A stretch of DNA of 42,014 nucleotides. Origin: Octopus bimaculoides. Taxonomy: Eukaryota. Below, in pieces: positions 1-41,850 of the stretch; position 1 is the stretch's first letter; every line of letters starts with the position of its first letter. Both the position numbers and the translations under genes were made by a program. The stretch is taken from assembly GCF_001194135.2 (NCBI RefSeq), contig NC_068986.1, forward strand, positions 95,568,695 to 95,610,708, read 5' to 3'. The notes under the pieces are model-generated. The model was not told the origin of the DNA. It saw nothing but the letters and a program-made list of their open reading frames with translations, and did not search any database.

Positions 1-72
<72 letters not shown>
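1..72 (+). repeat. (TG)n microsatellite
   Basis: Pure TG run at the start of the window. Confidence 0.99.
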
Positions 73-2395: not shown

Positions 2396-3371
2396 TGTGA
2401 TATANNNNNNNNNNNNNNNNNNNNNNNNNNNNNNNNNNNNNNNNNNNNNNNNNNNNNNNNNNNNNNNNNNNNNNNNNNNNNNNNNNNNNNNNNNNNNNNN
2501 NNNNNNNNNNNNNNNNNNNNNNNNNNNNNNNNNNNNNNNNNNNNNNNNNNNNNNNNNNNNNNNNNNNNNNNNNNNNNNNNNNNNNNNNNNNNNNNNNNNN
2601 NNNNNNNNNNNNNNNNNNNNNNNNNNNNNNNNNNNNNNNNNNNNNNNNNNNNNNNNNNNNNNNNNNNNNNNNNNNNNNNNNNNNNNNNNNNNNNNNNNNN
2701 NNNNNNNNNNNNNNNNNNNNNNNNNNNNNNNNNNNNNNNNNNNNNNNNNNNNNNNNNNNNNNNNNNNNNNNNNNNNNNNNNNNNNNNNNNNNNNNNNNNN
2801 NNNNNNNNNNNNNNNNNNNNNNNNNNNNNNNNNNNNNNNNNNNNNNNNNNNNNNNNNNNNNNNNNNNNNNNNNNNNNNNNNNNNNNNNNNNNNNNNNNNN
2901 NNNNNNNNNNNNNNNNNNNNNNNNNNNNNNNNNNNNNNNNNNNNNNNNNNNNNNNNNNNNNNNNNNNNNNNNNNNNNNNNNNNNNNNNNNNNNNNNNNNN
3001 NNNNNNNNNNNNNNNNNNNNNNNNNNNNNNNNNNNNNNNNNNNNNNNNNNNNNNNNNNNNNNNNNNNNNNNNNNNNNNNNNNNNNNNNNNNNNNNNNNNN
3101 NNNNNNNNNNNNNNNNNNNNNNNNNNNNNNNNNNNNNNNNNNNNNNNNNNNNNNNNNNNNNNNNNNNNNNNNNNNNNNNNNNNNNNNNNNNNNNNNNNNN
3201 NNNNNNNNNNNNNNNNNNNNNNNNNNNNNNNNNNNNNNNNNNNNNNNNNNNNNNNNNNNNNNNNNNNNNNNNNNNNNNNNNNNNNNNNNNNNNNNNNNNN
3301 NNNNNNNNNNNNNNNNNNNNNNNNNNNNNNNNNNNNNNNNNNNNNNNNNNNNNNNNNNNNNNNNNNNNNNN

Positions 3372-3411
<40 letters not shown>

Positions 3412-9125: not shown

Positions 9126-9222
9126 NNNNNNNNNNNNNNNNNNNNNNNNNNNNNNNNNNNNNNNNNNNNNNNNNNNNNNNNNNNNNNNNNNNNNNNNNNN
9201 NNNNNNNNNNNNNNNNNNNNNN

Positions 9223-9446: not shown

Positions 9447-10207
9447 GTAACAAAGTATATGTTGTTATTGTTGTTGTTGTACCAGATAAAGTCTTCTTCA
9501 TCTAGCCCAAGCCATCCAAGAAGCTAACTGAATTCCATGGAGAACCACAGATCCCACATGTTGGATAGTAGAGTAAAAGAAACCTGGTTTGTCAGCTTGA
9601 TATATAGTCTATTATTCTACAATCTAACCAGTCTTTTTTGTGGGACAAGTTCACCTTGGGTGTGTTTGAAGCACACTTCATTAGCAAATGTTATTGTGCC
9701 TTTGTTGGAATAATAAACATAACCACAGTAAACAAATGAGCAAAATTCTGTGTTGTCAACAAAATCATGATCTAGTTGTACACTTTTAATGATCAGTAGA
9801 ATAAGAAAACTCCCTTCAAAAACAGGTATGGGTTAATGACAGAAAAGGCATCCATCTGTTAAACAATTACTCAGTAATATGTATTCATCCAGCCCTTGCA
9901 GGCATGAAAAAAAATAGATGTAAAGTAGATGAATAAACAAGGTCATAGGCAGAGCTTATCCCAGTCTTTTGGAGCATTTAAGCAACTTGGTGAGCATGAC
10001 TACCCCTTGAACAGGACGACAAGTCATTGCAAGTTTCACACCTCCAGCAGTCACTGGTACTCATTTTTCAGCTGAGTGAACTGGAGCAATGTGAAATGAA
10101 GTGCCACCGAGTTCGGGAATTGAACCCACTATCTTATATTCACAAGTTCAACATCCTAACAACTACACTAAGCACCTTCACATACATTCACACTCATGCC
10201 CACATTA

Positions 10208-10490
10208 TTTAGCCCTTTTGCTACCATATTTCTGTGGAAATATGGTAGCAAACCTAGTCATTGAAATACAATGACTAGATTTCAATTAATTTTGAAGATA
10301 ATGAAAAATTTAGTAAAATAACGTTATCATTATTAAGTTGGTGCTTGGAACATAAACTAACATAAAATTGTAATGAGAAATTTTAATTTCACTTTAAAAC
10401 ATGAAGTTGATATCCTTAGAACCAGGTGCTGTCCTCAGTGAGTTGATATCAGAAGAGCTAAATATCAATAATTCTGCAACAACAACCATA
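10208..10490 (+). repeat. Interspersed repeat family 'E' (second copy at about 13210-13365)
   Basis: Shared tttagtaaaataac..tcattattaag.tggtg..tggaaca block in both copies. Confidence 0.65.
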
Positions 10491-10581
10491 TAGTATAATC
10501 GCCTGCATGTAATAATGTTGGTCAAACATTAGGAATCTTTTGAGCTCATTCAAGCTTTCGATTTTGTCATTTTCTTCCCAT

Positions 10582-10728
10582 TTGGCGTTAGGAAGGGCAT
10601 CCAGCTGTAGAAACTCTGCCAGATCAGATTGGAACCTGGTGCAGCCTTCTGGCTTGCCAGTCCTCAGTCAAATCGTCCAACCCATGCTAGCATGGAAAGC
10701 GGACGTTAAACGATGATGATGATGATGA
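10582..10728 (+). mobile_element. RTE-type retroposon 3' tail (family 'A') ending in (GAT)n
   Basis: ttggcgttaggaagggcatccagctgtagaaac...gcggacgttaaacgatgatgatg. Confidence 0.85.
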
Positions 10729-10932
10729 AGATCATAATATATGGAGTGTCAAGTATTATTACTACAGAAAGCAGTTTTATATACCAATCTATCTTTTGTT
10801 GCGGAAAGACATATTTGAAACTATTTACTGAAGCAATGTAACTTTCAGAAAATGCCAATTTGATTTTTTTGGTAGATATTTAACATCATTACTGAAATAA
10901 CCATGCAATTTAATTTCACTGTTTAAGGGTGT

Positions 10933-11290
10933 TCATCATCATCATCATCATCATCGTTTAACATCCGCTTTCCATGCTAGCATGGGTTGGACGATTTGAC
11001 TGAGGACTGGTGAACCAGATGGCTGCAACAGGCTCCAATCTGATTTGGCAGAGTTTCTACAGCTGGATGCCCTTCCTAACGCCAACCACTCCGAGAGTGT
11101 AGTGGGTGCTTTTACGTGCCACCAGCACAAAGGCCAATCAGGCGGTACTAGCAACAGCCATGCTTGAAATGGTGTATCTTACATGCCACCTGCACAGGAG
11201 CCAGTCCAGCGGCACTGACAACGATCTCGCTCAAATGTCTTACACGTGCCATCGTCACAAGTGCCAGGAAGGCGATGCTAGGCACCGGTG
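10933..11290 (-). mobile_element. Family 'A' RTE-type tail, inverted relative to 10582-10728
   Basis: Reverse complement has about 8 mismatches in about 145 bp against the 10582 copy. Confidence 0.85.
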
Positions 11291-15631: not shown

Positions 15632-16104
15632 NNNNNNNNNNNNNNNNNNNNNNNNNNNNNNNNNNNNNNNNNNNNNNNNNNNNNNNNNNNNNNNNNNNNN
15701 NNNNNNNNNNNNNNNNNNNNNNNNNNNNNNNNNNNNNNNNNNNNNNNNNNNNNNNNNNNNNNNNNNNNNNNNNNNNNNNNNNNNNNNNNNNNNNNNNNNN
15801 NNNNNNNNNNNNNNNNNNNNNNNNNNNNNNNNNNNNNNNNNNNNNNNNNNNNNNNNNNNNNNNNNNNNNNNNNNNNNNNNNNNNNNNNNNNNNNNNNNNN
15901 NNNNNNNNNNNNNNNNNNNNNNNNNNNNNNNNNNNNNNNNNNNNNNNNNNNNNNNNNNNNNNNNNNNNNNNNNNNNNNNNNNNNNNNNNNNNNNNNNNNN
16001 NNNNNNNNNNNNNNNNNNNNNNNNNNNNNNNNNNNNNNNNNNNNNNNNNNNNNNNNNNNNNNNNNNNNNNNNNNNNNNNNNNNNNNNNNNNNNNNNNNNN
16101 NNNN

Positions 16105-17184: not shown

Positions 17185-18057
17185 NNNNNNNNNNNNNNNN
17201 NNNNNNNNNNNNNNNNNNNNNNNNNNNNNNNNNNNNNNNNNNNNNNNNNNNNNNNNNNNNNNNNNNNNNNNNNNNNNNNNNNNNNNNNNNNNNNNNNNNN
17301 NNNNNNNNNNNNNNNNNNNNNNNNNNNNNNNNNNNNNNNNNNNNNNNNNNNNNNNNNNNNNNNNNNNNNNNNNNNNNNNNNNNNNNNNNNNNNNNNNNNN
17401 NNNNNNNNNNNNNNNNNNNNNNNNNNNNNNNNNNNNNNNNNNNNNNNNNNNNNNNNNNNNNNNNNNNNNNNNNNNNNNNNNNNNNNNNNNNNNNNNNNNN
17501 NNNNNNNNNNNNNNNNNNNNNNNNNNNNNNNNNNNNNNNNNNNNNNNNNNNNNNNNNNNNNNNNNNNNNNNNNNNNNNNNNNNNNNNNNNNNNNNNNNNN
17601 NNNNNNNNNNNNNNNNNNNNNNNNNNNNNNNNNNNNNNNNNNNNNNNNNNNNNNNNNNNNNNNNNNNNNNNNNNNNNNNNNNNNNNNNNNNNNNNNNNNN
17701 NNNNNNNNNNNNNNNNNNNNNNNNNNNNNNNNNNNNNNNNNTATAGTAATGTTTGTTGCCACTTTTGTGTGGCTGTTCCATGCAGAACAATGTTACTACA
17801 TTTTAACTCCAGGAAAATAATTTTTTCCAGTTGGTAAACAACACACAACCTGTGCCTGATATATTGCAATATATCAGACATAAATTGTCGTTAACCAGCT
17901 AGAACAGATGTTTTCTTGGGGTTAAAATGTAGTAGAATTGTTCTGCATGGAACAGCCACACAAAAGTGGCAACAAACATTACTGTTTAGTATCATTATTG
18001 CTTGTGTCTCTTTCAGAGATTTTAAAACCAGCTACTTTAGCTTGTTTTATATATAAG

Positions 18058-20757: not shown

Positions 20758-21289
20758 NNNNNNNNNNNNNNNNNNNNNNNNNNNNNNNNNNNNNNNNNNN
20801 NNNNNNNNNNNNNNNNNNNNNNNNNNNNNNNNNNNNNNNNNNNNNNNNNNNNNNNNNNNNNNNNNNNNNNNNNNNNNNNNNNNNNNNNNNNNNNNNNNNN
20901 NNNNNNNNNNNNNNNNNNNNNNNNNNNNNNNNNNNNNNNNNNNNNNNNNNNNNNNNNNNNNNNNNNNNNNNNNNNNNNNNNNNNNNNNNNNNNNNNNNNN
21001 NNNNNNNNNNNNNNNNNNNNNNNNNNNNNNNNNNNNNNNNNNNNNNNNNNNNNNNNNNNNNNNNNNNNNNNNNNNNNNNNNNNNNNNNNNNNNNNNNNNN
21101 NNNNNNNNNNNNNNNNNNNNNNNNNNNNNNNNNNNNNNNNNNNNNNNNNNNNNNNNNNNNNNNNNNNNNNNNNNNNNNNNNNNNNNNNNNNNNNNNNNNN
21201 NNNNNNNNNNNNNNNNNNNNTATATATATATATATGTGTGTGTGTGTATGTACGTATGTGTGTATATATGTATCTTCTTTCTTTTAGCT

Positions 21290-34300: not shown

Positions 34301-35455
34301 TCAGTGTATATCAGCTACCGTCTGCACCACTTCTGCTTCTTCTTTCGTCTCTGAGGATACACCAATCATCGTCATATCACCATCGGAGAAATTACTAGAA
34401 CGAGACATCGGACAGGGAACCAATTCTCCGAAACGTTTGAAATCTACATTCCAGTGACCGTTTTTCTTATCAAACTGGTTGGCATGAGCAAATCTGTATC
34501 CCCAAACAATCTCTTCAGCAATGTAGGACGTCTTCACTTGACACATCTCTCCAGTTGACTCGATCACTCCGTTAATCCACACAAGAAGCTCGATTTTCTT
34601 GACGAGCAGATCTTCCCGGTTAAGACAGAAGAAAGGGCTGGCATCCGTTATATAGTGCGTCAAAATAACCGGCCACATTAAAAACACGTTACTGCCAACG
34701 TTGTTTATTTCAAAGTCCACTTTGACTTGATAGAGAGGATGGACGAAACCCTCAAGCGTCACGTACTCGGCGACCAGCATGCCACCAACTTTAGCATTGA
34801 TGAGGTGGGTATGTCGAAGATCGGCCACCTGAATCTGTAACACTGGATGCCCGTTCTCGCAACACATACACGCTTTGCAGCTGAACATCACTGTATTTGA
34901 ACGGTTCTTTGGACGAACCAGCTTGGCGAATACAAACCCCAATGAGATCGCTTCGAGAATAAAACCAATGAGGACTTGAAAGAAGAGCGTTGGAATCGTA
35001 CCAGCACAATCAGTGCTGGGGTACATGAACCCGTAACCAATTGTTGTTTGAGTTTCAACAGAAAACAAGAAAAAATCTGCAAACGTTTCCAGGTCTGGGA
35101 GGCAAGGTTTCGAATTAGAATCGTTCGAGTTGAAGTCGCCGTGTATGTAGGAGTTCAGCCACCAAATCACAGCAAATGCAATAAAAGTGATAGCATGAGA
35201 GGAGAGGAAGACTAGAATAGCCCAATGCCATCGCATTTCAAGAATGGTGTTGTAATAATCCTTGATAAAACTGAAACGATGCTTTTCGAGGCCTTTCCGG
35301 TCGATAAGAGAATTGCCTGCTTTGGTGAGAAGAAAATGACCTGGATCTTCGCCTGTCTTTTCATTGATACAGTTTAAGTATTTACAAAAATAATTCCATA
35401 TTCCACCCAAAAAGTAATTTCTGTTCGTCGGTTTATCTGTGTTTTGGTTAACCAT
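34301..35455 (-). CDS. Inward-rectifier potassium channel 'Kir-A', 384 aa, single coding exon
   Basis: Intact ORF with RWHW before M1, paired extracellular Cys, ETQTTIGYG filter, M2, KLVRPKNR, DLRHTHL, SPF and TSY...EI.WGYRF cytoplasmic motifs. Good Kozak context (aataATGg). Confidence 0.97.
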   Translation of the reverse strand: MVNQNTDKPTNRNYFLGGIWNYFCKYLNCINEKTGEDPGHFLLTKAGNSLIDRKGLEKHRFSFIKDYYNTILEMRWHWAILVFLSSHAITFIAFAVIWWLNSYIHGDFNSNDSNSKPCLPDLETFADFFLFSVETQTTIGYGFMYPSTDCAGTIPTLFFQVLIGFILEAISLGFVFAKLVRPKNRSNTVMFSCKACMCCENGHPVLQIQVADLRHTHLINAKVGGMLVAEYVTLEGFVHPLYQVKVDFEINNVGSNVFLMWPVILTHYITDASPFFCLNREDLLVKKIELLVWINGVIESTGEMCQVKTSYIAEEIVWGYRFAHANQFDKKNGHWNVDFKRFGELVPCPMSRSSNFSDGDMTMIGVSSETKEEAEVVQTVADIH

Positions 35456-35510
35456 TATTGAGACTTGAATTTGATGTCTATCAATTCTTTATCTTGGGGG
35501 TTTAGAGTTA

Positions 35511-35540
35511 CTTTTAAAAAATGAAAGGAAAAAAAAATCA
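35511..35540 (-). promoter_or_regulatory. Candidate 3' splice acceptor of a Kir-A 5'-UTR intron
   Basis: On minus, a T-rich tract then AG lies 55 nt upstream of the ATG, with an in-frame stop between them. Confidence 0.55.
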
Positions 35541-36839
35541 GCAGACACTTAATTTAGTGCAAGCACCATTTTAAATTCTTAATCGGAATGCGTGATTTAT
35601 AATTTCTACTGATGAATGGATTAAACGTAATCTAAAGATTAATAAAGAACCAAGAAAAAATAACGTTTGTTGAAGTTTTTTTAAAACCTCAAATAATCAT
35701 GTTCAATTCCGATTAAACAAATAAATCTACTCTCTCTCCTCTAAAGATTTAATCAATACGTACTAATAAAGCGTTCTATCTGGCCAAGATACTCACATAG
35801 CTGTCGACAGTCGAATTTAGTTGTAATTATAATATCACAAAGAGGTAGAGTCCATTGGATCGCCAACTTACAAATATCGCCTCCATTTCCCATTTCCACC
35901 CACTCCCAAAACTATTACTGAAATTTTTCTTTCTTTGCCATGATGTTGGACAAGTTTAAAAAGTTTTAAACCATCTTAAACTTATTAAGCAAAGCAATTT
36001 GTCTTCCCCTTTTTCAATCTTCACAGCTCCATCTTCACCTTTATGAGAAATTTTGGTATAGTCCACCTGGGAAGTAGCAGTATCAATACGAAGAAATGTA
36101 AGGTTAAGAAGATCATGTGCAATCACGTGATTCCGGATTCGATCCTATCGGACGACAGCACCTTGGGCAAATGTCTTCTAGGCATGACCTCGAGAATCAA
36201 GGTTTGTCAGTGCAGTTGGGTAGCTGAAAACTGGATGCACTGCACTTATTGGCTCATCGCCCAAAGCATTCACACCAAGTCTACGATATGAGAATGACTC
36301 GATATTTTAATACATTGTTGTTTATGGCAACAATCTATGAGAAGTTGAGAAGTCAGGTGAGATATTTGAACACTATAGACAGATACAGGTATACCAAATA
36401 TCATAGAAAATAAAATCGTGATTTATAAAAATTATCACCGCCTCTAGAGGATGTGTCATGAATTACCAAACGGCAATTAAAGACCATCCATCAAAAACAG
36501 TCTCTTAATTACAAATTCAGGATCCAGATGGAAGGGAACATTGTCAGAAGCCGATCAAAGTAGATTTTCTCTTTCCCATAATTGTTTATCAGATCCAAAG
36601 AATAATTTTGAACTCGGGAATATGTAATAACGAAGGTTAACATAAACTTCTTTTTCCATATCACAAATGGTCGATGGAGCAGATATTTACTTCTGGTCTC
36701 CACGCCAGATAACTCTCTTCCAGAATGAGTCTTGGTATTTTGCCATAGGAAAAATTGAACTCAATACTCCAAATTTATACATCATTTGCCAGTTGTACAA
36801 CAGTTCCAAGGTACCCACTTTAGGTATACAAATATGAGT

Positions 36840-37290
36840 AATCACCTACAACAGAAGTAGCAGCTAAATTTACTTAAATTACACCCTACCGTCTTTAGAA
36901 AAGGACACACTGGATAAGGTAGTTCTAGATATACTAAAAAAAATGATCGACAAGGCTGAAATGTCTTTAACCATAGGTTTGCTTGATCAGGCCTAACCTG
37001 GGACTAAATAGCAACACACATAGATGACAAAAAAGTAACAGAAATACACTAGAGTTCACGTAGACATCACACCGAACTAACAGGGGAGCCTCTACGTATG
37101 CGTTTGATCTGACAAAAATAACAACTCTCTCTCTCTCTCTCTCTCAAATCACATCTTATCTTAAATCGGAAAGGACACATTGGATAATGTAGTTCTTAAT
37201 ACAAAATCTCTGAAGTAGAAGGCAGGAATGCATTTCGTCATAGCTCTGTTTTATCAGGACTGATTTGGAGCTAAACAACAACAGGTACAA
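36840..37290 (-). repeat. Two copies of repeat family 'F' (others at about 11700-12060, 19490-19660, 21845-22030 and inside the duplication)
   Basis: Shared aaggacaca.tggataa.gtagttct ... atcagg.ct.a..tgg..ctaaa motifs. Confidence 0.6.
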
Positions 37291-37330
37291 CATTTAGTCA
37301 ATACAGAAACAACAGCATTAATGCAGACCA

Positions 37331-37645
37331 GCACTCCGTCGGTTACGACGACGAGGGTTCCAGTCGATCTGATCAACGGAACAGCCTGCTCGTGAAATTA
37401 ACGTGCAAGTGACTGAGCAATCCACAGATACGTGTACCCCTAACGTAGTTCTCAGGGAGATTCAGCGTAACACAGTGTGACAAGGCCGGCCCTTTGAAAT
37501 ACAGGTACTACTCATTTTTACCAGCTGAGTGGACTGGAGCAACGTGAAATAAAATGTCTTGCTCAAGGACACAACGCATCGCTGAGAATTGAACTCACGA
37601 CCTTACGATCGTGAGCCGAATGTCCTAACCACTAAGCCACGCGCC
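37331..37645 (-). mobile_element. tRNA-headed SINE sharing the family 'C' 3' tail but with a different body
   Basis: On minus: gcgcgtggcttagtggttagg...gagttcaattc...ttgtgtccttgagcaagac, then the C-type tail gcacgttaatttcacgagcagg...gacggagtgc. Confidence 0.8.
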
Positions 37646-38173
37646 TTTACCAATTCAGACCAATATATTAGATAAATCACAGAATTAAGCCTGATCTACC
37701 TGGCTGTACCAATAATAAACTGTGATGAACACAGAGCAATATATTGTCTATCATCAGTGGAGGCTGTAAAACAAATCATGAACATAGAGAAATAAAAATA
37801 CTTAAAATGAATGACCACTTACCTAGACATGCTGAGAGCAAAGTCTGTTGTATCAAGCTCCAAGACACCTCATGTTTAGTAACTCCATGTATACGCTGAT
37901 ATGTCTACAATCCCATCAGAACTCAATCCCTCCTATGCGATCCTAACCTTCTTAACCTCAAGCACTGTACTGCAACGTACAACAGCCCAGAGAAACAGGA
38001 CATTCTTTCTTTTATGCTCTCACAAAGCTTGACTTCTTTCTGTCGACTAACAAAACCCACTGGCTGAAAGATCGAGTAGCGAAGAAGTTTATATGCAGTC
38101 TCTCGGCTAGAAAAAGCACTCACAACAGCCTTCAAATCACACCCTGTCATCTTGAATAAAGAATACATTAGAC

Positions 38174-38448
38174 CAGGGGGTTTTCAAACTGTGGTCCGCG
38201 GACCACAGGGGGTCCGTGGACAGCAAATACTTTTTATGGGCAATTTGATTTTATATATGTTTTTTAATCGAAATCTTTTAATTGACAATGAACCTATTTG
38301 TTAAATACTGTTAAATAAATAAATGTAAAAATATGTTATTTTAAGCAAATATTTATGTATAAATTTCATAAGCGTTTATAAGAGGGTCCCTAAAGTAAAG
38401 CCTGAAATACAAAGGGGGTCCGCAAGTCGAAAAGTTTGAAAACCCCTG
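38174..38448. mobile_element. hAT (Charlie-like) MITE, 275 bp, with 8-bp TSD
   Basis: TIR cagggggttttcaaact / agtttgaaaacccctg; perfect TSD cattagac at 38166-38173 and 38449-38456. Confidence 0.93.
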
Positions 38449-39353
38449 CATTAGACAATGTAGTCTCTGGTATTCGTATAGAAAGACGCGGTAGTCAATC
38501 TGGAACGTCTTTGATTTTATATCTGCTTGGTGGCTAACTTGGGGCTAAAAACAGCAGAACAAATGTAATATATCCATACAGTACTTCTTTTCGGTAATCC
38601 ATATCATGTAGAAGTGCACAGTATGGTCCTTAGGTGGATGGAGGTAGAGTATATTGGAAAAGCATGATCTGTGGATCGTACTCTACTGTTCGAGGAACGA
38701 TCTATATGTCATGGGTCTTTTCGGTGAGGGACCTGGAGGAATTAAACAACTTTAACCTCGGTGAAATGATCCGTAAAGAGTTGGAGTTTTATACCTGAAC
38801 ATTGCGTAGTGCCGCTGATAGGTTACGAACCGATAACCTTTCGTTTCGATCCAAGAAATCAATAAATATAAGAGTATCTATAAAAATGGTCACTCAAGTT
38901 TAATTGAAAATGAAGGTCAAGAAGAAACTTCCTTCAACCAGTTTCCATCCCACACTATCACCATTTTAAAAACAATATAATTGTAAGATAACATACGAGG
39001 GAACAAGTGCACAGCTATCAAAGGACGAGATCTTGAAATCTTTACGATCAAATAAAAGACACGGAAATAGTCGTAAAGCGCCTTCAGATAATATCCACAC
39101 GGGAAGTGGGAGTGTACTTTCGAACATTGAAACGTGCGGGTGTGCTCAAAAAATGGTTATGCCTCACATAAAACAGAATAAAACCAAATTAGATTAAAAT
39201 ATAACGATTCACACATACAAAACTCAACATGTTTCTGGAGAAAGAAAAAAAACACAGCTGGTAAAATAAGGGAAATATTTTAATTGTTTTCTTCTACCAC
39301 TAAGCCTTAAAATACACAACGTAGACAATCGATTCGAAGACTGAGGAACAATT

Positions 39354-40019
39354 ATGGAAAATATATCTATGAGGAAGAATTCAAAACGTCACATTTACTG
39401 TGAATCTGAATCTGTGACTGAAACGGCAACAACGGATAGAAAAATGAGACATTTATGTCACTATTTTTTCACACAATGTTTGAAATATTTTCGCAGAAAT
39501 CCCCTTCAACAAAAACGCAAAGCTCTAGTAAACAAATCTGGTCAGTACAGTATAAACTACAGAGGACGGAAACCCATCTTCTTTATCAAGGATTTCTATC
39601 TGACTTTGCTTGATCTCCAGTGGCGATGGGCAATTCTTGCATTTTTCATTATGTACTTTACGATATTTATTTTTTTCACTCTCGCTTGGTTCGCCGTTTG
39701 CTGGATCAATGGCGATTTTATTCACTTGGGAGATCCGAGTTATGAACCGTGTGTCAAAGGGGTGACCAGCTTCATAGGTTTACTTCTTTTCTCTATTGAG
39801 ACACAGACTTCAATCGGGTACGGTTTCGTTTATCCAAACACGTCCTGCGTCGGTTCCTTGGTCATTCTGTTTTTCCAAATAACAGTTGGACTCATCGCGG
39901 AAACTTTTCTACTCACCTACATTGTATCCAAGTTTTTTCGACCTTCCAAACGAGCTAAAACAATTCGCTTCAGCGAAAATGCGGTGATTTGTCAAGAGGA
40001 TGGCATACTTTGTCTCCAG
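39354..40019 (+). CDS. Inward-rectifier potassium channel 'Kir-B', first coding exon (222 codons); remainder not in window
   Basis: ALVNKSG...KDFYLTLLDLQWRW-M1-INGD-C-ETQTSIGYG-C-M2-KFFRPSKRAKTIRFSENAVI..DGILCLQ. Homology stops exactly at CAG|GTAAGT (40020). The ORF-track tail to 40097 is intronic read-through. Confidence 0.9.
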
Positions 40020-41000: not shown

Positions 41001-41850
41001 ACCAGTTTAAGGCATTCGATAGGGTTGACCATCGGTATCTGGCGGCGGTCGGACTGGGCCCGACTTTTCGTGGATGGATTAATGCTATATCGACTCAGTC
41101 GTCCGGGTGAACGGCTTCTTCTCGAAGCCGTTCGCGATCGAGCGTTCATTTCGCCAGGGCTGCCCCGTCCCGCTTCTGTATGTATTGGCTCTTGAGCCAC
41201 TGCTGCGAAGGTTGGAGGCCACGGAGGAAGACCTGCGTGATCTATGTTATAGTAGAGGAGCGACAGCATATGCGGATGATGTCACCATCGTCGTGTCTGA
41301 TGAAGGGCAGCTACCTCGTGTAGAAGACTCCATCAAAAGATACGAAGCGGTGGCAGGAGCAAAAGTTGACCGGAAAAAATCAGTCGGCTTTCAACTCAGC
41401 ACCTGGAGGGGCAAGTCGACGCCTCCCAACAGCGTCGTGGGGCGTTGGACGGAGGGCCCGGTTAGACTGCTCGGAGTCTGGTTATCGACTATCATCAAGA
41501 TTGTACCGCCTCCCTTCTTTAACAAAGAAAAGGAGAAAAACTGAAGCGAGGTCACAAGCAAGGTGACGGCCATAACCCAGACCTGGTGTGGAAGGACGCT
41601 ATCCTTGCTAGGAAGGGCCGAGGTTGCACAGGTGTTTATAGCATCTGTGATAACCTACCGCCTAACCGTCGTACCTTGCCCCGGTGTGTGGCTTACCAAG
41701 CTGGAATGGATCCTTTTCCGCTTTTTGTAGAATGGGAAACCACCACTTGTGAGGCGCTCCATCTGCTGCCAGAAACCGTTAAAGGGTGGGTTACGGATGA
41801 CTTGGTTGATGATGTGCAAGTATGCGCTGAGGCTGAGACATCTCTGGCAT
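40997..41850 (+). mobile_element. 5'-truncated, decayed Tx1/L1-clade LINE ORF2 (RT and downstream)
   Basis: LDQFKAFDRVDHRYL...RQGCPVPLLYVLALEPLL...YADDVTIVV...YEAVAGAKVDRKKS...LLGVW...GRAEV...YRL...SICCQKPLKGGL, with frameshifts and stops. Confidence 0.9.

What the first reader, a model, noticed from the sequence alone, without database searches (positions are those of the whole stretch)
35006..35056. Kir-A has a Kir7.1-type pore: Met in place of the conserved Arg after GYG
The sequence reads ETQTTIGYGFMYPSTDC (M144, codon 35024-35026). In almost all Kir channels this position is Arg (Kir2.1 R148, salt bridge with E138). The known vertebrate exception is Kir7.1 (M125; TIGYGTMFPSGDC from memory), where Met underlies tiny conductance, low Ba2+/Cs+ sensitivity, shallow external-K+ dependence and large Rb+ currents. 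Kir-A also matches Kir7.1 in M2 and the linker (LEA...AK..RPKNR). It is either an invertebrate Kir7-like ortholog, making that class much older than vertebrates, or a convergent pore.
Basis: partly seen in the sequence, partly recalled or inferred. Interest (0 to 1): 0.75.

Follow-up and report, generated by a model that had tools for sequence, protein, structure and literature searches.

The report
Arginine-less pore in molluscan Kir channels
An octopus inward-rectifier potassium channel gene lacks the pore arginine that nearly all such channels carry, as do its relatives across molluscs; this pore resembles that of vertebrate Kir7.1 but evolved independently, so the two lineages are natural replicates of one unusual pore design.

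Summary
On the minus strand, 35006-35056 encodes ETQTTIGYGFMYPSTDC inside an intact 384-aa Kir gene (34301-35455) of Octopus bimaculoides. M144 aligns without gaps to Kir2.1 R148 and Kir7.1 M125.

Met is not the conserved feature. The O. sinensis orthologue has Val (GTG versus ATG). A molluscan clade of gastropods, bivalves and cephalopods, including the neighbouring Kir-B, carries A, V, I, L, F, S or M here, always followed by Tyr-Pro.

Orthology with Kir7.1 is rejected:
- NJ bootstrap for Kir7.1 plus the molluscan clade is 0/100.
- ML ΔlnL is −34 to −61 (KH p 0.024-0.001).
- Kir7.1 nests with Arg-bearing Kir4.x and Kir1.1.
- The molluscan clade places best beside Arg-bearing molluscan Kirs (chiton, limpet).

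Reconstruction gives Arg at both parental nodes, so there were two independent losses. Both lineages also gained Pro at +4 and neutralised one tether Lys. The M2 Glu arose on the molluscan stem and, separately, in the Kir4/7 ancestor.

The motif is the Kv/KirBac-type outer pore. The literature calls it unique to Kir7.1 among Kir channels. Kir7.1-like permeation is predicted but untested.

The parts
34301..35455 (-). Kir-A: complete single-exon coding sequence (384 aa plus stop) of an inward-rectifier K+ channel of Octopus bimaculoides
   Evidence: ORF. Pfam IRK and IRK_C. PDB Kir matches at E 6e-63. AlphaFold model with mean pLDDT 80.8 whose best structural matches are Kir6.2, Kir4.1, Kir2.2 and Kir3.2. 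Exact protein on GCA_001194135.2 chromosome CM046606.1. dN/dS 0.35 against O. sinensis.
35006..35056 (-). Pore helix end, selectivity filter and outer pore loop: E134-TQTTIGYGFMYPSTD-C150
   Evidence: Codon-by-codon read-out. E134, Y145, P146 and C150 are invariant in the molluscan clade.
35024..35026 (-). Codon ATG = M144, homologous to Kir2.1 R148 and Kir7.1 M125 (filter position +2)
   Evidence: GTG (Val) in the O. sinensis orthologue. Cephalopod ancestor reconstructed as Val with posterior 0.96.
35018..35020 (-). Codon CCC = P146 (filter position +4), the Kv/KirBac/Kir7.1-type proline
   Evidence: Invariant in the clade. Pro127 of Kir7.1 and the Kv-type pattern are described in the Kir7.1 structure preprint. 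KirBac1.1 GYGDMHP and KirBac3.1 GYGKLIP verified.
34952..34954 (-). Codon GAA = E168 in M2, at the Kir2.1 D172 / Kir4.1 E158 / Kir7.1 E149 rectification site
   Evidence: Glu in 14/14 clade members and 10/10 Kir7.1 sequences, but in only 17/180 other Kirs.
34904..34906 (-). Codon AAC = N184, replacing the second Lys of the tether-helix PKKR PIP2 site (Kir2.1 K188; Kir7.1 N165)
   Evidence: Non-basic in 14/14 clade members and 9/10 Kir7.1 sequences. The single-Lys coordination in Kir7.1 is described.
39354..40019 (+). Kir-B exon 1 (residues 1-222 of XP_052824456.1): a paralogue of the same non-Arg clade, head-to-head with Kir-A. Pore IGYGFVYPNTSC with V159 at 39828-39830. Ends at splice donor CAG|GTAAGT.
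   Evidence: Pfam IRK 8.9e-34.
35456..39353 (.). 3.9-kb spacer between the divergently transcribed Kir-A and Kir-B start codons (possible shared regulatory region; not analysed)
   Evidence: Coordinates. The same head-to-head arrangement occurs in O. sinensis and in Patella caerulea.

Best explanation
Kir-A is a functional member of a mollusc-specific paralogue clade of inward-rectifier K+ channels. This clade secondarily lost the pore arginine at filter position +2 and returned to the outer-pore pattern of Kv, KcsA and KirBac channels: GYG, any residue, a hydrophobic or small residue, Tyr, Pro. The loss happened within the molluscan lineage, starting from an Arg-bearing Kir, and was independent of the change that produced vertebrate Kir7.1 from an Arg-bearing Kir1/Kir4-type ancestor. 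Both lineages made the same set of substitutions: a non-basic residue at +2, Pro at +4, and neutralisation of one of the two adjacent tether lysines that contact PIP2. Both also carry Glu at the M2 rectification site, which arose on the molluscan stem and, for Kir7.1, already in the Kir4/7 ancestor. This is parallel evolution of a module, not shared ancestry. The Met in this octopus is a recent Val-to-Met change within that permissive position.

Mechanistically (inferred), the channel is a K+-selective tetramer. It has an intact TIGYG filter, the pore-helix Glu E134 and the extracellular Cys pair C118/C150. It should be gated by PIP2 through K178, R181, K183 and R185, with weakened coordination at N184 and H77. 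It should rectify weakly to moderately, because it has E168 in M2 but lacks the cytoplasmic acidic residues of strong rectifiers (N220 and N295 in place of Kir2.1 E224 and E299). It lacks the Arg that in other Kirs ties the pore helix to the turret and shapes the external cation site. It is therefore expected to resemble Kir7.1: small unitary conductance, weak dependence on external K+, and low sensitivity to external Ba2+ and Cs+.
For: SHOWN. (1) Anatomy: an intact Kir gene with M144 at the Arg position and a Kir fold.
(2) Clade: every member found lacks a basic residue at +2 and has Tyr-Pro. Members come from Pomacea, Patella, Lottia, Batillaria, Arion, Bradybaena, Candidula, Solemya, Sinanodonta, O. 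sinensis, Argonauta, an unnamed Logan sequence most similar to the cephalopod members, and Kir-B. The residue itself varies among A, V, I, L, F, S and M.
(3) In this sample the clade is restricted to molluscs. In an exhaustive HMMER search (3809 hits, top 150 inspected) and in a clade-profile search, the next-best proteins all carry Arg or Lys.
(4) It is not a Kir7.1 orthologue. NJ bootstrap gives 0/100 for Kir7.1 plus the molluscan clade, against 84-86/100 for Kir7.1+Kir4+Kir1.1, with or without the shared-motif columns. ML gives ΔlnL −34 to −55 (KH p 0.024-0.002), and −41 to −59 without the motif columns. In a scan of all 79 attachment points, sister-to-Kir7.1 ranks 60th (ΔlnL −61, RELL 0.0002).
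(5) The best placement is beside the Arg-bearing group P0047, P0093, P0141 and P0151 (summed RELL about 0.76). Three of these are molluscan: two genes 20 kb apart in the chiton Liolophura, and one in Patella caerulea, which also carries non-Arg members.
(6) Marginal reconstruction gives Arg with posterior 1.0 at three nodes: the Kir1/4/7 ancestor, the Kir4/7 ancestor, and the ancestor of the clade plus its Arg-type sister. It gives Ala (0.87) for the clade ancestor, Val (0.96) for the cephalopod ancestor, and Met (1.0) for the Kir7.1 ancestor.
(7) Purifying selection: dN/dS is 0.35 against O. sinensis, and the gene pair is conserved from gastropod to cephalopod.
(8) [Y/F]-P follows the non-basic residue in 24/24 Kir7.1 and clade sequences and in a thrips Kir, but follows Arg or Lys in only 12/177 other Kirs.

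FROM THE LITERATURE. Met125 and Pro127 are the Kv-type +2 and +4 residues, also present in KirBac1.1 and said to be unique to Kir7.1 among Kirs. M125R restores dependence on external K+ and sensitivity to divalent block. Kir7.1 uses one tether Lys where Kir2.2 and Kir3.2 use two (10.1101/2024.06.07.597981). M125R raises unitary conductance about 20-fold (PMC3254186, citing Krapivinsky 1998).
Against: The phylogenetics has limits. The ML code is my own, with a BLOSUM62-derived rate matrix and four gamma categories. The backbone tree came from NJ. There are only 50 taxa and 303 columns. The KH test is anti-conservative when the reference tree is chosen afterwards.

Placing the molluscan clade as sister to the whole vertebrate Kir1/4/7 group is not rejected (ΔlnL −12 to −16, p 0.08-0.13). 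The topology (Moll,(K7,(K1,K4))) is marginal (ΔlnL −22, p 0.06). Rooting with KirBac sequences is unresolved, and the root can fall on the molluscan stem at ΔlnL −2.9.

Many comparison sequences are unnamed, so annelid, brachiopod and other spiralian sampling is uncertain. No functional or expression data exist for any clade member. In Kir2.1-type channels loss of this Arg is generally deleterious (my background knowledge), so conduction by homotetramers is not guaranteed. Met versus Val in O. bimaculoides rests on one assembly.
Confidence: 0.72

Rival explanations
1. Kir-A and its clade are the protostome orthologues of vertebrate Kir7.1 (KCNJ13). A Kir7-type class with a non-Arg pore already existed in the bilaterian ancestor.
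For: The shared-motif resemblance is striking. Lamprey and shark Kir7.1 read GYGTMYP[N/D]GDC, against molluscan GYG-x-x-YPN-x-x-C. The two groups also share the M2 Glu and RPK-x-R.
Against: NJ bootstrap is 0/100. ML gives ΔlnL −34 to −61 in every configuration tested, and the rejection strengthens when the shared-motif columns are removed. Kir7.1 is closest to Kir4.1, Kir4.2 and Kir1.1 (distances 0.95-1.15) and farthest from the molluscan clade (1.43). Kir-A scores 216 bits against Kir4.1 but 185 against Kir7.1. The ancestral clade residue is Ala, not Met. No such genes were seen in other phyla.
Confidence: 0.04
2. There was a single ancient loss of Arg. The molluscan clade is the protostome counterpart of the whole vertebrate K+-transport group (Kir1.1, Kir4.x, Kir7.1). 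That group's ancestor already had a non-Arg pore, and Kir1.1 and Kir4.x later regained Arg.
For: Molluscan clade as sister to (Kir1,Kir4,Kir7) is not rejected (ΔlnL −12 to −16, p 0.08-0.13). (Moll,(K7,(K1,K4))) is marginal (p 0.06). The preliminary NJ tree joined the two groups at one deep node. The M2 Glu is shared with Kir4.x.
Against: This is not the ML-best placement, which is beside molluscan Arg-type Kirs. NJ support for Kir1/4/7 plus the molluscan clade is 5-10/100. It needs an exact regain of Arg and of its Glu partner interaction. It also needs loss of the class from all other protostomes and from invertebrate deuterostomes sampled. On the best tree the Kir1/4/7 ancestor is Arg with posterior 1.0.
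Confidence: 0.07
3. Retention rather than reversion: the molluscan clade is an early-branching animal Kir lineage that kept the ancestral Kv/KirBac-type outer pore (hydrophobic at +2, Pro at +4). All other animal Kirs descend from a lineage that acquired Arg.
For: KirBac1.1 (GYGDMHP) and KirBac3.1 (GYGKLIP) have the same pattern. With KirBac outgroups the root is unresolved and can lie on the molluscan stem at only ΔlnL −2.9. The clade sits on a long branch near the midpoint root.
Against: It requires loss of this lineage in every non-molluscan phylum. The ML-best position is sister to Arg-bearing chiton and limpet Kirs. Long-branch attraction to the outgroup is expected for such a divergent clade. 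The nearest sequences by distance are spiralian Kirs with Arg, including Macrostomum GYGFRYPSDRC, which looks like an Arg-plus-YP intermediate.
Confidence: 0.05
4. Functional rival, compatible with the evolutionary account: clade members are not autonomous channels. They are modulatory or obligate heteromeric subunits, in the way Kir5.1 pairs with Kir4.1. The conserved head-to-head partners (Kir-A with Kir-B) would co-assemble.
For: The head-to-head pair of non-Arg Kirs is conserved in Octopus (the window) and in Patella, which suggests co-regulation. Position 144 tolerates many residues. The insect review reports that Kir3 subunits of Drosophila and Aedes give no current when expressed alone.
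Against: Kir7.1 with the same pore pattern conducts as a homotetramer. The filter, pore-helix Glu, disulfide cysteines and most PIP2 contacts are intact. No interaction data exist.
Confidence: 0.2
5. The Met codon is an assembly error or a rare allele; the real O. bimaculoides residue is Val, as in other cephalopods.
For: Only one assembly lineage carries the exact protein. The window comes from a gap-rich draft (six N runs). ATG and GTG differ by one transition.
Against: Nothing indicates an error. The two species differ at 27 other residues with dS 0.09, so one more substitution is unremarkable. Either way the residue is non-basic, so the finding stands.
Confidence: 0.1

Closest known systems
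Vertebrate Kir7.1 (KCNJ13)
   Same: A non-basic residue at filter +2 (Met in Kir-A itself), Tyr/Phe at +3, Pro at +4, Asp-Cys at +7 and +8, Glu at the M2 rectification site, only one tether Lys (RPKNR), and no acidic residues at the Kir2.1 E224 and E299 positions.
   Different: Not an orthologue. Kir7.1 is invariant for Met and has Thr at +1, whereas the molluscan clade varies (A, V, I, L, F, S, M) and mostly has Phe or Tyr at +1. Overall identity is about 30%, lower than to Kir4.1. Kir-A is intronless in its coding sequence. Kir7.1's function is measured; Kir-A's is not.
Vertebrate Kir4.1 (KCNJ10), the best-scoring solved structure
   Same: Highest sequence score (216 bits) and structural match (TM 0.80-0.82). 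M2 Glu. RefSeq names the cephalopod orthologues 'channel 10-like'.
   Different: Kir4.1 keeps the pore Arg (GYGFRY), Ile at +4 and PKKR. Kir-A does not group with it specifically.
Arg-bearing molluscan Kirs: chiton Liolophura P0093 and P0550, limpet Patella P0151
   Same: The ML-best sister group of the clade, from the same phylum, and one from a species that also has non-Arg members.
   Different: They keep Arg at +2, Val at +4, Gln in M2, and (in the chiton P0093) PKKR.
Prokaryotic KirBac1.1 and KirBac3.1, and the Kv/KcsA outer pore
   Same: Hydrophobic residue at +2 and Pro at +4 after GYG: GYGDMHP and GYGKLIP. The Kir7.1 structure preprint describes this as the voltage-gated-channel pattern.
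   Different: Kir-A lacks the Asp at +1. It has the eukaryotic Kir turret with its disulfide cysteines and the eukaryotic cytoplasmic domain. Its similarity to KirBac is much lower (about 87 bits).
Macrostomum lignano Kir (P0040, P0044)
   Same: Among the closest non-molluscan sequences by distance. Pore GYGFRYPSDRC shares Phe at +1, Tyr-Pro-Ser and the Cys with Kir-A.
   Different: It retains Arg at +2, Gln in M2 and Lys at position 184. It is not the ML-best sister (ΔlnL about −19 to −21 for that group).

Membership tests
Inward-rectifier K+ channel (Kir; Pfam IRK + IRK_C) | Two-transmembrane pore domain matching PF01007 | tested here: met
   IRK 2.7e-40, residues 44-182. Model helices at 76-105, 125-137 and 153-180.
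Inward-rectifier K+ channel (Kir; Pfam IRK + IRK_C) | Immunoglobulin-like cytoplasmic domain matching PF17655 | tested here: met
   IRK_C 5.4e-45, residues 189-354. Beta-rich C-terminal domain with pLDDT about 90.
Inward-rectifier K+ channel (Kir; Pfam IRK + IRK_C) | K+ selectivity signature T-x-G-Y-G | tested here: met
   T138-I-G-Y-G142.
Inward-rectifier K+ channel (Kir; Pfam IRK + IRK_C) | Overall fold like solved Kir structures | tested here: met
   Foldseek top hits are Kir6.2, Kir4.1, Kir2.2 and Kir3.2, E about 1e-33, target TM 0.7-0.82.
Inward-rectifier K+ channel (Kir; Pfam IRK + IRK_C) | Conserved extracellular cysteine pair (Kir2.1 C122/C154) | tested here: met
   C118 and C150, invariant in all aligned sequences.
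Inward-rectifier K+ channel (Kir; Pfam IRK + IRK_C) | Pore-helix Glu paired with Arg at filter +2 (Kir2.1 E138-R148), usually cited as universal in eukaryotic Kirs except Kir7.1 | tested here: not met
   E134 is present but position 144 is Met. No clade member has Arg or Lys there. This is a near-universal property rather than a defining one, since Kir7.1 is an accepted member without it.
Inward-rectifier K+ channel (Kir; Pfam IRK + IRK_C) | Basic PIP2-contact residues ((K/R)WR at the base of M1; K, R, K, K, R in the tether) | tested here: inconclusive
   R75, W76, K178, R181, K183 and R185 are present. H77 replaces Kir2.1 R82 and N184 replaces K188. Binding itself cannot be tested here.
Inward-rectifier K+ channel (Kir; Pfam IRK + IRK_C) | Inward rectification and K+ conduction | not testable with these tools
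   Needs electrophysiology.
Kir7.1 / KCNJ13 subfamily (orthology) | Groups with KCNJ13 in phylogeny to the exclusion of other Kir subfamilies | tested here: not met
   NJ 0/100. ML ΔlnL −34 to −61, p 0.024-0.001.
Kir7.1 / KCNJ13 subfamily (orthology) | Kir7.1 is the most similar characterised paralogue | tested here: not met
   Kir4.1 216 bits, Kir3.2 213, Kir6.2 212, Kir2.2 207, Kir7.1 185. No Kir7.1 in the top 120 of the clade-profile search.
Kir7.1 / KCNJ13 subfamily (orthology) | Invariant Met at +2 with Pro at +4 | tested here: inconclusive
   Kir-A itself has Met and Pro. But Met is not conserved in its clade (Val in O. sinensis, Ala ancestrally), while Pro is invariant.
Kir7.1 / KCNJ13 subfamily (orthology) | Very low unitary conductance, low Ba2+/Cs+ sensitivity, weak external-K+ dependence, large Rb+ current | not testable with these tools
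   Predicted by analogy with the M125R experiments.
Kv/KcsA/KirBac-type outer pore motif (works like; not a family assignment) | Hydrophobic residue at +2 and Pro at +4 after GYG | tested here: met
   Kir-A GYG-F-M-Y-P, against KirBac1.1 GYG-D-M-H-P and KirBac3.1 GYG-K-L-I-P. Preprint statement.
Kv/KcsA/KirBac-type outer pore motif (works like; not a family assignment) | Acidic residue at +1 (GYGD) | tested here: not met
   F143 in Kir-A. The clade has F, Y, T, S, M or V at +1.

The most novel reading that the evidence does not exclude
Molluscs carry an ancient, conserved head-to-head pair of Kir genes whose pore independently recapitulates a co-ordinated set of Kir7.1-defining substitutions: loss of the +2 Arg, gain of Pro at +4, and loss of one PIP2-contacting tether Lys, together with the M2 Glu that Kir7.1 shares with Kir4.x. 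If these changes are functionally coupled, they form an epistatic module that turns a classical Kir into a low-conductance channel insensitive to external K+ and suited to epithelial K+ transport. In that case nature has run the Kir7.1 experiment twice, and the molluscan clade, with its many tolerated +2 residues, is a ready-made mutational series for working out how Kir pores function without the Glu-Arg bridge.
Probability: 0.4. Interest if true: 0.65.

Novelty: new variant of a known kind. Interest (0 to 1): 0.5.

Why it matters
Structure and pharmacology papers on Kir channels state that Arg at filter +2 is present in all Kir channels other than Kir7.1, and that Met125 and Pro127 are unique to Kir7.1 among Kirs. 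A whole molluscan clade, with two or more genes per species in several species, contradicts this. It also shows that the Arg-less, Pro-containing pore arose at least twice in animals, and a third time in a thrips Kir, each time in a Tyr-Pro context.

This yields three things:
- Independent replicates to test which substitutions must accompany loss of the Glu-Arg bridge.
- A natural series of +2 residues (A, V, I, L, F, S, M) for structure-function work relevant to KCNJ13 retinal disease and to the Kir7.1 drug-screening mutant M125R.
- Candidate epithelial K+-transport channels in molluscs, for example in renal organs, gill, mantle or retina.

It does not push the origin of Kir7 back before vertebrates.

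Tried and rejected
(1) Plus-strand reading of the coordinates is meaningless; the gene is on the minus strand.

(2) Kir7.1 orthology was tested by NJ bootstrap and ML and rejected.

(3) I rooted the animal Kir tree with KirBac1.1 and KirBac3.1 to separate retention from reversion. The result is inconclusive: 16 root positions lie within 5 lnL units.

(4) Numerical-gradient ML was too slow, so I replaced it with analytic gradients.

(5) I looked for a second Kir-B exon and for other Kir fragments in the window. There are none; the rest of Kir-B lies beyond 42014.

(6) I looked for independent confirmation of the Met codon. The exact protein is found only in one assembly lineage, with no Logan contigs.

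(7) Literature searches for a described molluscan or lophotrochozoan Kir lacking the pore Arg, or for an invertebrate Kir7 class, found nothing relevant. The library holds open-access papers only.

(8) Structure prediction and fold search confirm a Kir fold but cannot discriminate between subfamilies. Kir7.1 is not among the top 50 hits.

(9) My recalled human Kir6.1 sequence was not an exact database match and was not used.

(10) Pfam scans of the other long ORFs in the window found only a reverse-transcriptase fragment.
Full report
WHAT IS THERE

The coordinates given make sense only on the minus strand. The plus-strand translation is meaningless. The reverse complement reads E134-TQTTIGYGF-M144-YPSTD-C150, with ATG for M144 at 35024-35026.

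The motif sits in an uninterrupted 384-aa ORF at 34301-35455, minus strand. This ORF matches Pfam IRK (2.7e-40) and IRK_C (5.4e-45) and solved Kir structures at E 6e-63. An AlphaFold model (mean pLDDT 80.8) has the Kir fold. Its best PDB matches are Kir6.2, Kir4.1, Kir2.2 and Kir3.2, with target TM 0.7-0.82.

The exact protein is encoded on chromosome CM046606.1 of Octopus bimaculoides assembly GCA_001194135.2. The pore aligns to Kir4.1 without gaps, GYGFRY against GYGFMY. In a 205-sequence alignment M144 falls in the column of Kir2.1 R148 and Kir7.1 M125.

The reference sequences are verified. Human Kir7.1 was checked residue for residue against PDB 9pr5_A. Nine other human Kirs were verified by exact database look-up.

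THE MET IS NOT THE CONSERVED FEATURE

The 93%-identical O. sinensis orthologue has Val at this position. Its codon is GTG where this window has ATG, a single transition. Argonauta and an unnamed Logan sequence that groups with the cephalopod members also have Val.

A second Kir gene lies in the window: Kir-B, exon 1 at 39354-40019 on the plus strand, ending at a CAG|GTAAGT donor. It is identical to residues 1-222 of XP_052824456.1 and reads GYGFVYPNTSC.

I searched with an exhaustive HMMER scan (3809 hits, top 150 read) and with a clade profile. The result is a coherent group of proteins in which position +2 is never basic and is always followed by Tyr-Pro:
- Gastropods: Pomacea, Patella, Lottia, Batillaria, Arion, Bradybaena, Candidula.
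- Bivalves: Solemya, Sinanodonta.
- Cephalopods: O. sinensis, Argonauta, Kir-A and Kir-B.

The residue at +2 is A, V, I, L, F, S or M. E134, Y145, P146 and C150 are invariant. Every next-best protein carries Arg or Lys.

Among 180 other Kirs in the alignment only three lack a basic residue: a thrips Kir (GYGTSYPSQEC), an unnamed metagenomic sequence, and a His variant.

IS IT A KIR7 ORTHOLOGUE?

Kir7.1 orthologues from lamprey to human are invariant for Met. The early-branching ones read GYGTMYP[N/D]GDC, very close to the molluscan consensus. So the hypothesis deserved a real test.

Similarity argues against it:
- Kir-A scores 216 bits against Kir4.1 but 185 against Kir7.1.
- Kir7.1's nearest solved paralogue is Kir4.1 at 266 bits.
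- The clade profile reaches arthropod Kirs and vertebrate Kir2 before any Kir7.1.
- The mean corrected distance from the molluscan clade to Kir7.1 (1.43) exceeds its distance to every human Kir except Kir5.1, while Kir7.1 lies 0.95-1.15 from Kir4.1, Kir4.2 and Kir1.1.

Neighbour joining on 204 sequences and 303 columns gives 0/100 bootstrap for Kir7.1 plus the molluscan clade. It gives 84-86/100 for Kir7.1+Kir4+Kir1.1. Deleting the ten shared-motif columns changes nothing.

No tree program was available, so I wrote a likelihood implementation. It uses a BLOSUM62-derived reversible rate matrix, four gamma categories and analytic branch gradients, which I checked numerically. On 50 taxa:
- Forcing Kir7.1 and the molluscan clade together costs 34-55 lnL units (KH p 0.024-0.002).
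- Without the motif columns the cost is 41-59 units (p 0.006-0.001).
- In a scan of all 79 attachment points for the molluscan clade, the Kir7.1 stem ranks 60th (ΔlnL −61, RELL 0.0002, KH p 0.001).

WHERE DOES THE CLADE BELONG?

The ML-best attachment is beside four Arg-bearing sequences, P0047, P0093, P0141 and P0151. The summed RELL support for that neighbourhood is about 0.76.

Two of them lie 20 kb apart on one chromosome of assembly GCA_032854445.2. That assembly is the chiton Liolophura, according to papers that cite the accession. P0151 is from Patella caerulea, GCA_036850965.1. The same limpet carries non-Arg members on another chromosome. So molluscs hold both the Arg-type and the Arg-less paralogues.

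Marginal reconstruction on the best tree gives the following:
- Arg (posterior 1.0), Val at +4, Gln in M2 and Lys at the tether site for the common ancestor of the two molluscan groups.
- Ala (0.87), Pro, Glu and His/Asn for the Arg-less ancestor.
- Val (0.96) for the cephalopod ancestor.
- Arg (1.0) for the Kir1/4/7 and Kir4/7 ancestors.
- Met (1.0) and Pro (1.0) for the Kir7.1 ancestor.

The best-supported history is therefore two independent losses of Arg. Each was accompanied by gain of Pro at +4 and neutralisation of one tether Lys. Glu in M2 arose on the molluscan stem and, separately, already in the Kir4/7 ancestor.

WHAT REMAINS OPEN

Placing the clade as sister to the entire vertebrate Kir1/4/7 group is not rejected (ΔlnL −12 to −16, p 0.08-0.13). 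The one topology that would make a single ancient loss parsimonious is marginal (ΔlnL −22, p 0.06).

Rooting with KirBac1.1 and KirBac3.1, both verified against the PDB, is unresolved. The root can fall on the molluscan stem at ΔlnL −2.9. Likelihood alone therefore cannot exclude retention of an ancestral Kv/KirBac-type pore. That reading would need loss of the lineage from every other phylum, and it is the expected artefact for a long branch.

My likelihood code, the NJ-derived backbone, the modest sampling with many unnamed sequences, and the KH test's known bias are real limits.

WHAT THE MOTIF IS, AND HOW THE CHANNEL PROBABLY WORKS

The Kir7.1 structure preprint (10.1101/2024.06.07.597981) makes several relevant points:
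- Met125 and Pro127 are the +2 and +4 residues typical of voltage-gated K+ channels. They also occur in KirBac1.1 and are 'unique to Kir7.1' among Kir channels, with Arg in all the others.
- The Arg stabilises contacts between pore helix and turret and helps shape an external ion site.
- M125R restores dependence on external K+ and sensitivity to divalent block.
- Kir7.1 coordinates the PIP2 5'-phosphate with one tether Lys, where Kir2.2 and Kir3.2 use two.

M125R raises unitary conductance about 20-fold (PMC3254186, citing Krapivinsky 1998).

Kir-A shares all of these sequence determinants. It keeps the TIGYG filter, E134, the C118/C150 pair and most PIP2 contacts (K178, R181, K183, R185). 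It has H77 and N184 at two others. It has E168 in M2 but Asn at both cytoplasmic acidic sites of strong rectifiers.

I therefore infer a K+-selective, PIP2-dependent channel that rectifies weakly to moderately and has Kir7.1-like permeation: small conductance, weak external-K+ dependence and low Ba2+/Cs+ sensitivity. The sequence features are shown. The biophysics is inference, at roughly even odds.

The gene is under purifying selection (dN/dS 0.35 against O. sinensis). The unnamed Logan homologue recurs in 76 short-contig blocks of sequencing-run assemblies. That is consistent with transcription, though I could not check the library types.

AN ASSOCIATION WORTH NOTING

[Tyr/Phe]-Pro follows the non-basic residue in all 24 Kir7.1 and clade sequences and in the thrips case. 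It follows Arg or Lys in only 12 of 177 other Kirs. Among those twelve is Macrostomum GYGFRYPSDRC, one of the nearest non-molluscan relatives by distance. This suggests, as inference, that a Tyr-Pro context is permissive or required for losing the Arg.

GENE ARRANGEMENT

Kir-A and Kir-B are transcribed divergently, with 3.9 kb between their start codons. The same head-to-head pairing of two Arg-less Kirs occurs in two other species:
- In O. sinensis.
- In Patella caerulea, where the partner reads TVGYGTLYPQPTC with an M2 Glu and RPKYR.

The pairing therefore appears to predate the split between gastropods and cephalopods. It raises the possibility of co-regulation or heteromeric assembly, which is speculation.

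COMPARISON WITH WHAT IS KNOWN, AND VERDICT

Kir-A is a genuine Kir family member. It works, as far as sequence can tell, like Kir7.1. It is not a member of the Kir7.1 subfamily.

I found no paper describing an Arg-less molluscan Kir or an invertebrate Kir7-like class. Database names are automatic ('channel 10-like', 'GIRK2-like', 'hypothetical').

I rate it a new variant of a known kind: a second, independent, phylum-wide occurrence of the pore that was thought unique to Kir7.1. Interest is moderate. It corrects a commonly repeated generalisation and offers a natural replicate for structure-function work, but it is not a new type of channel and nothing functional is yet known.

Noticed in passing
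window 39354-40019 (+), with 34301-35455 (-): Kir-A and Kir-B form a head-to-head (divergent) gene pair 3.9 kb apart. The same arrangement of two Arg-less Kirs is found in O. sinensis (L002) and in the limpet Patella caerulea (L007 3674-5481 minus and 10001-11263 plus). The pairing therefore looks older than the gastropod-cephalopod split and may mean co-regulation or heteromeric assembly.
   Followed up: partly
window 39354-40019; protein P0181 (XP_052824456.1): The RefSeq model of O. bimaculoides Kir-B (375 aa) lacks about 64 residues of the cytoplasmic domain that all relatives have (gap after ...LCLQ in alignment A1). The O. sinensis counterpart is called at 439 aa. An exon is probably missing from the model, possibly because of an assembly gap. 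The remaining exons lie beyond the end of the window.
   Followed up: partly
window 41107-41544 (+): This ORF contains a reverse-transcriptase fragment (Pfam RVT_1, 1.2e-07, with a YADD motif). It is a retroelement remnant, apparently inside the first intron of Kir-B.
   Followed up: partly
window 1-72, 3372-3409, and N runs at 393-557, 2405-3371, 9126-9222, 15632-16104, 17185-17741, 20758-21220: There are six assembly gaps (2722 N in total). Two long (TG)n/(GT)n microsatellites lie near the first two gaps: 1-72 is about 320 bases before the 393-557 gap, and 3372-3409 directly abuts the end of the 2405-3371 gap. The long 'ORFs' listed across these regions are artefacts of translating N runs.
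   Followed up: no
protein P0077 (Thrips palmi XP_034255564.1); protein P0130 (unnamed JGI contig): These are two further Kirs without a basic residue at +2. The thrips Kir reads GYGTSYPSQEC, again with Tyr-Pro; it groups with an Arg-bearing GYGLRYPNE sequence in the NJ tree. P0130 reads GYGFSYINDHC, without Pro. They look like additional independent losses of the pore Arg.
   Followed up: partly
L003 and L004 (Liolophura chiton, GCA_032854445.2 chr CM072720.1, about 20.73-20.76 Mb): Two Arg-bearing Kir genes sit about 20 kb apart in the chiton genome and fall in the best-supported sister group of the Arg-less clade. Whether chitons also have Arg-less members could not be determined.
   Followed up: partly
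Kir-A residue 77 (window 35225-35227) and cephalopod orthologues: Cephalopod members replace the second Arg of the conserved (K/R)WR PIP2-contact motif with His (RWH). Gastropod and bivalve members keep Arg. This may further weaken PIP2 binding or make it pH-dependent.
   Followed up: no
alignment column of Kir-A E168 (Kir2.1 D172): Most invertebrate Kirs in the sample have Gln at the M2 rectification site (111 of 180). Asp (27), Glu (17) and Asn (16) are minorities there. All Arg-less molluscan Kirs and all Kir7.1 sequences have Glu.
   Followed up: no
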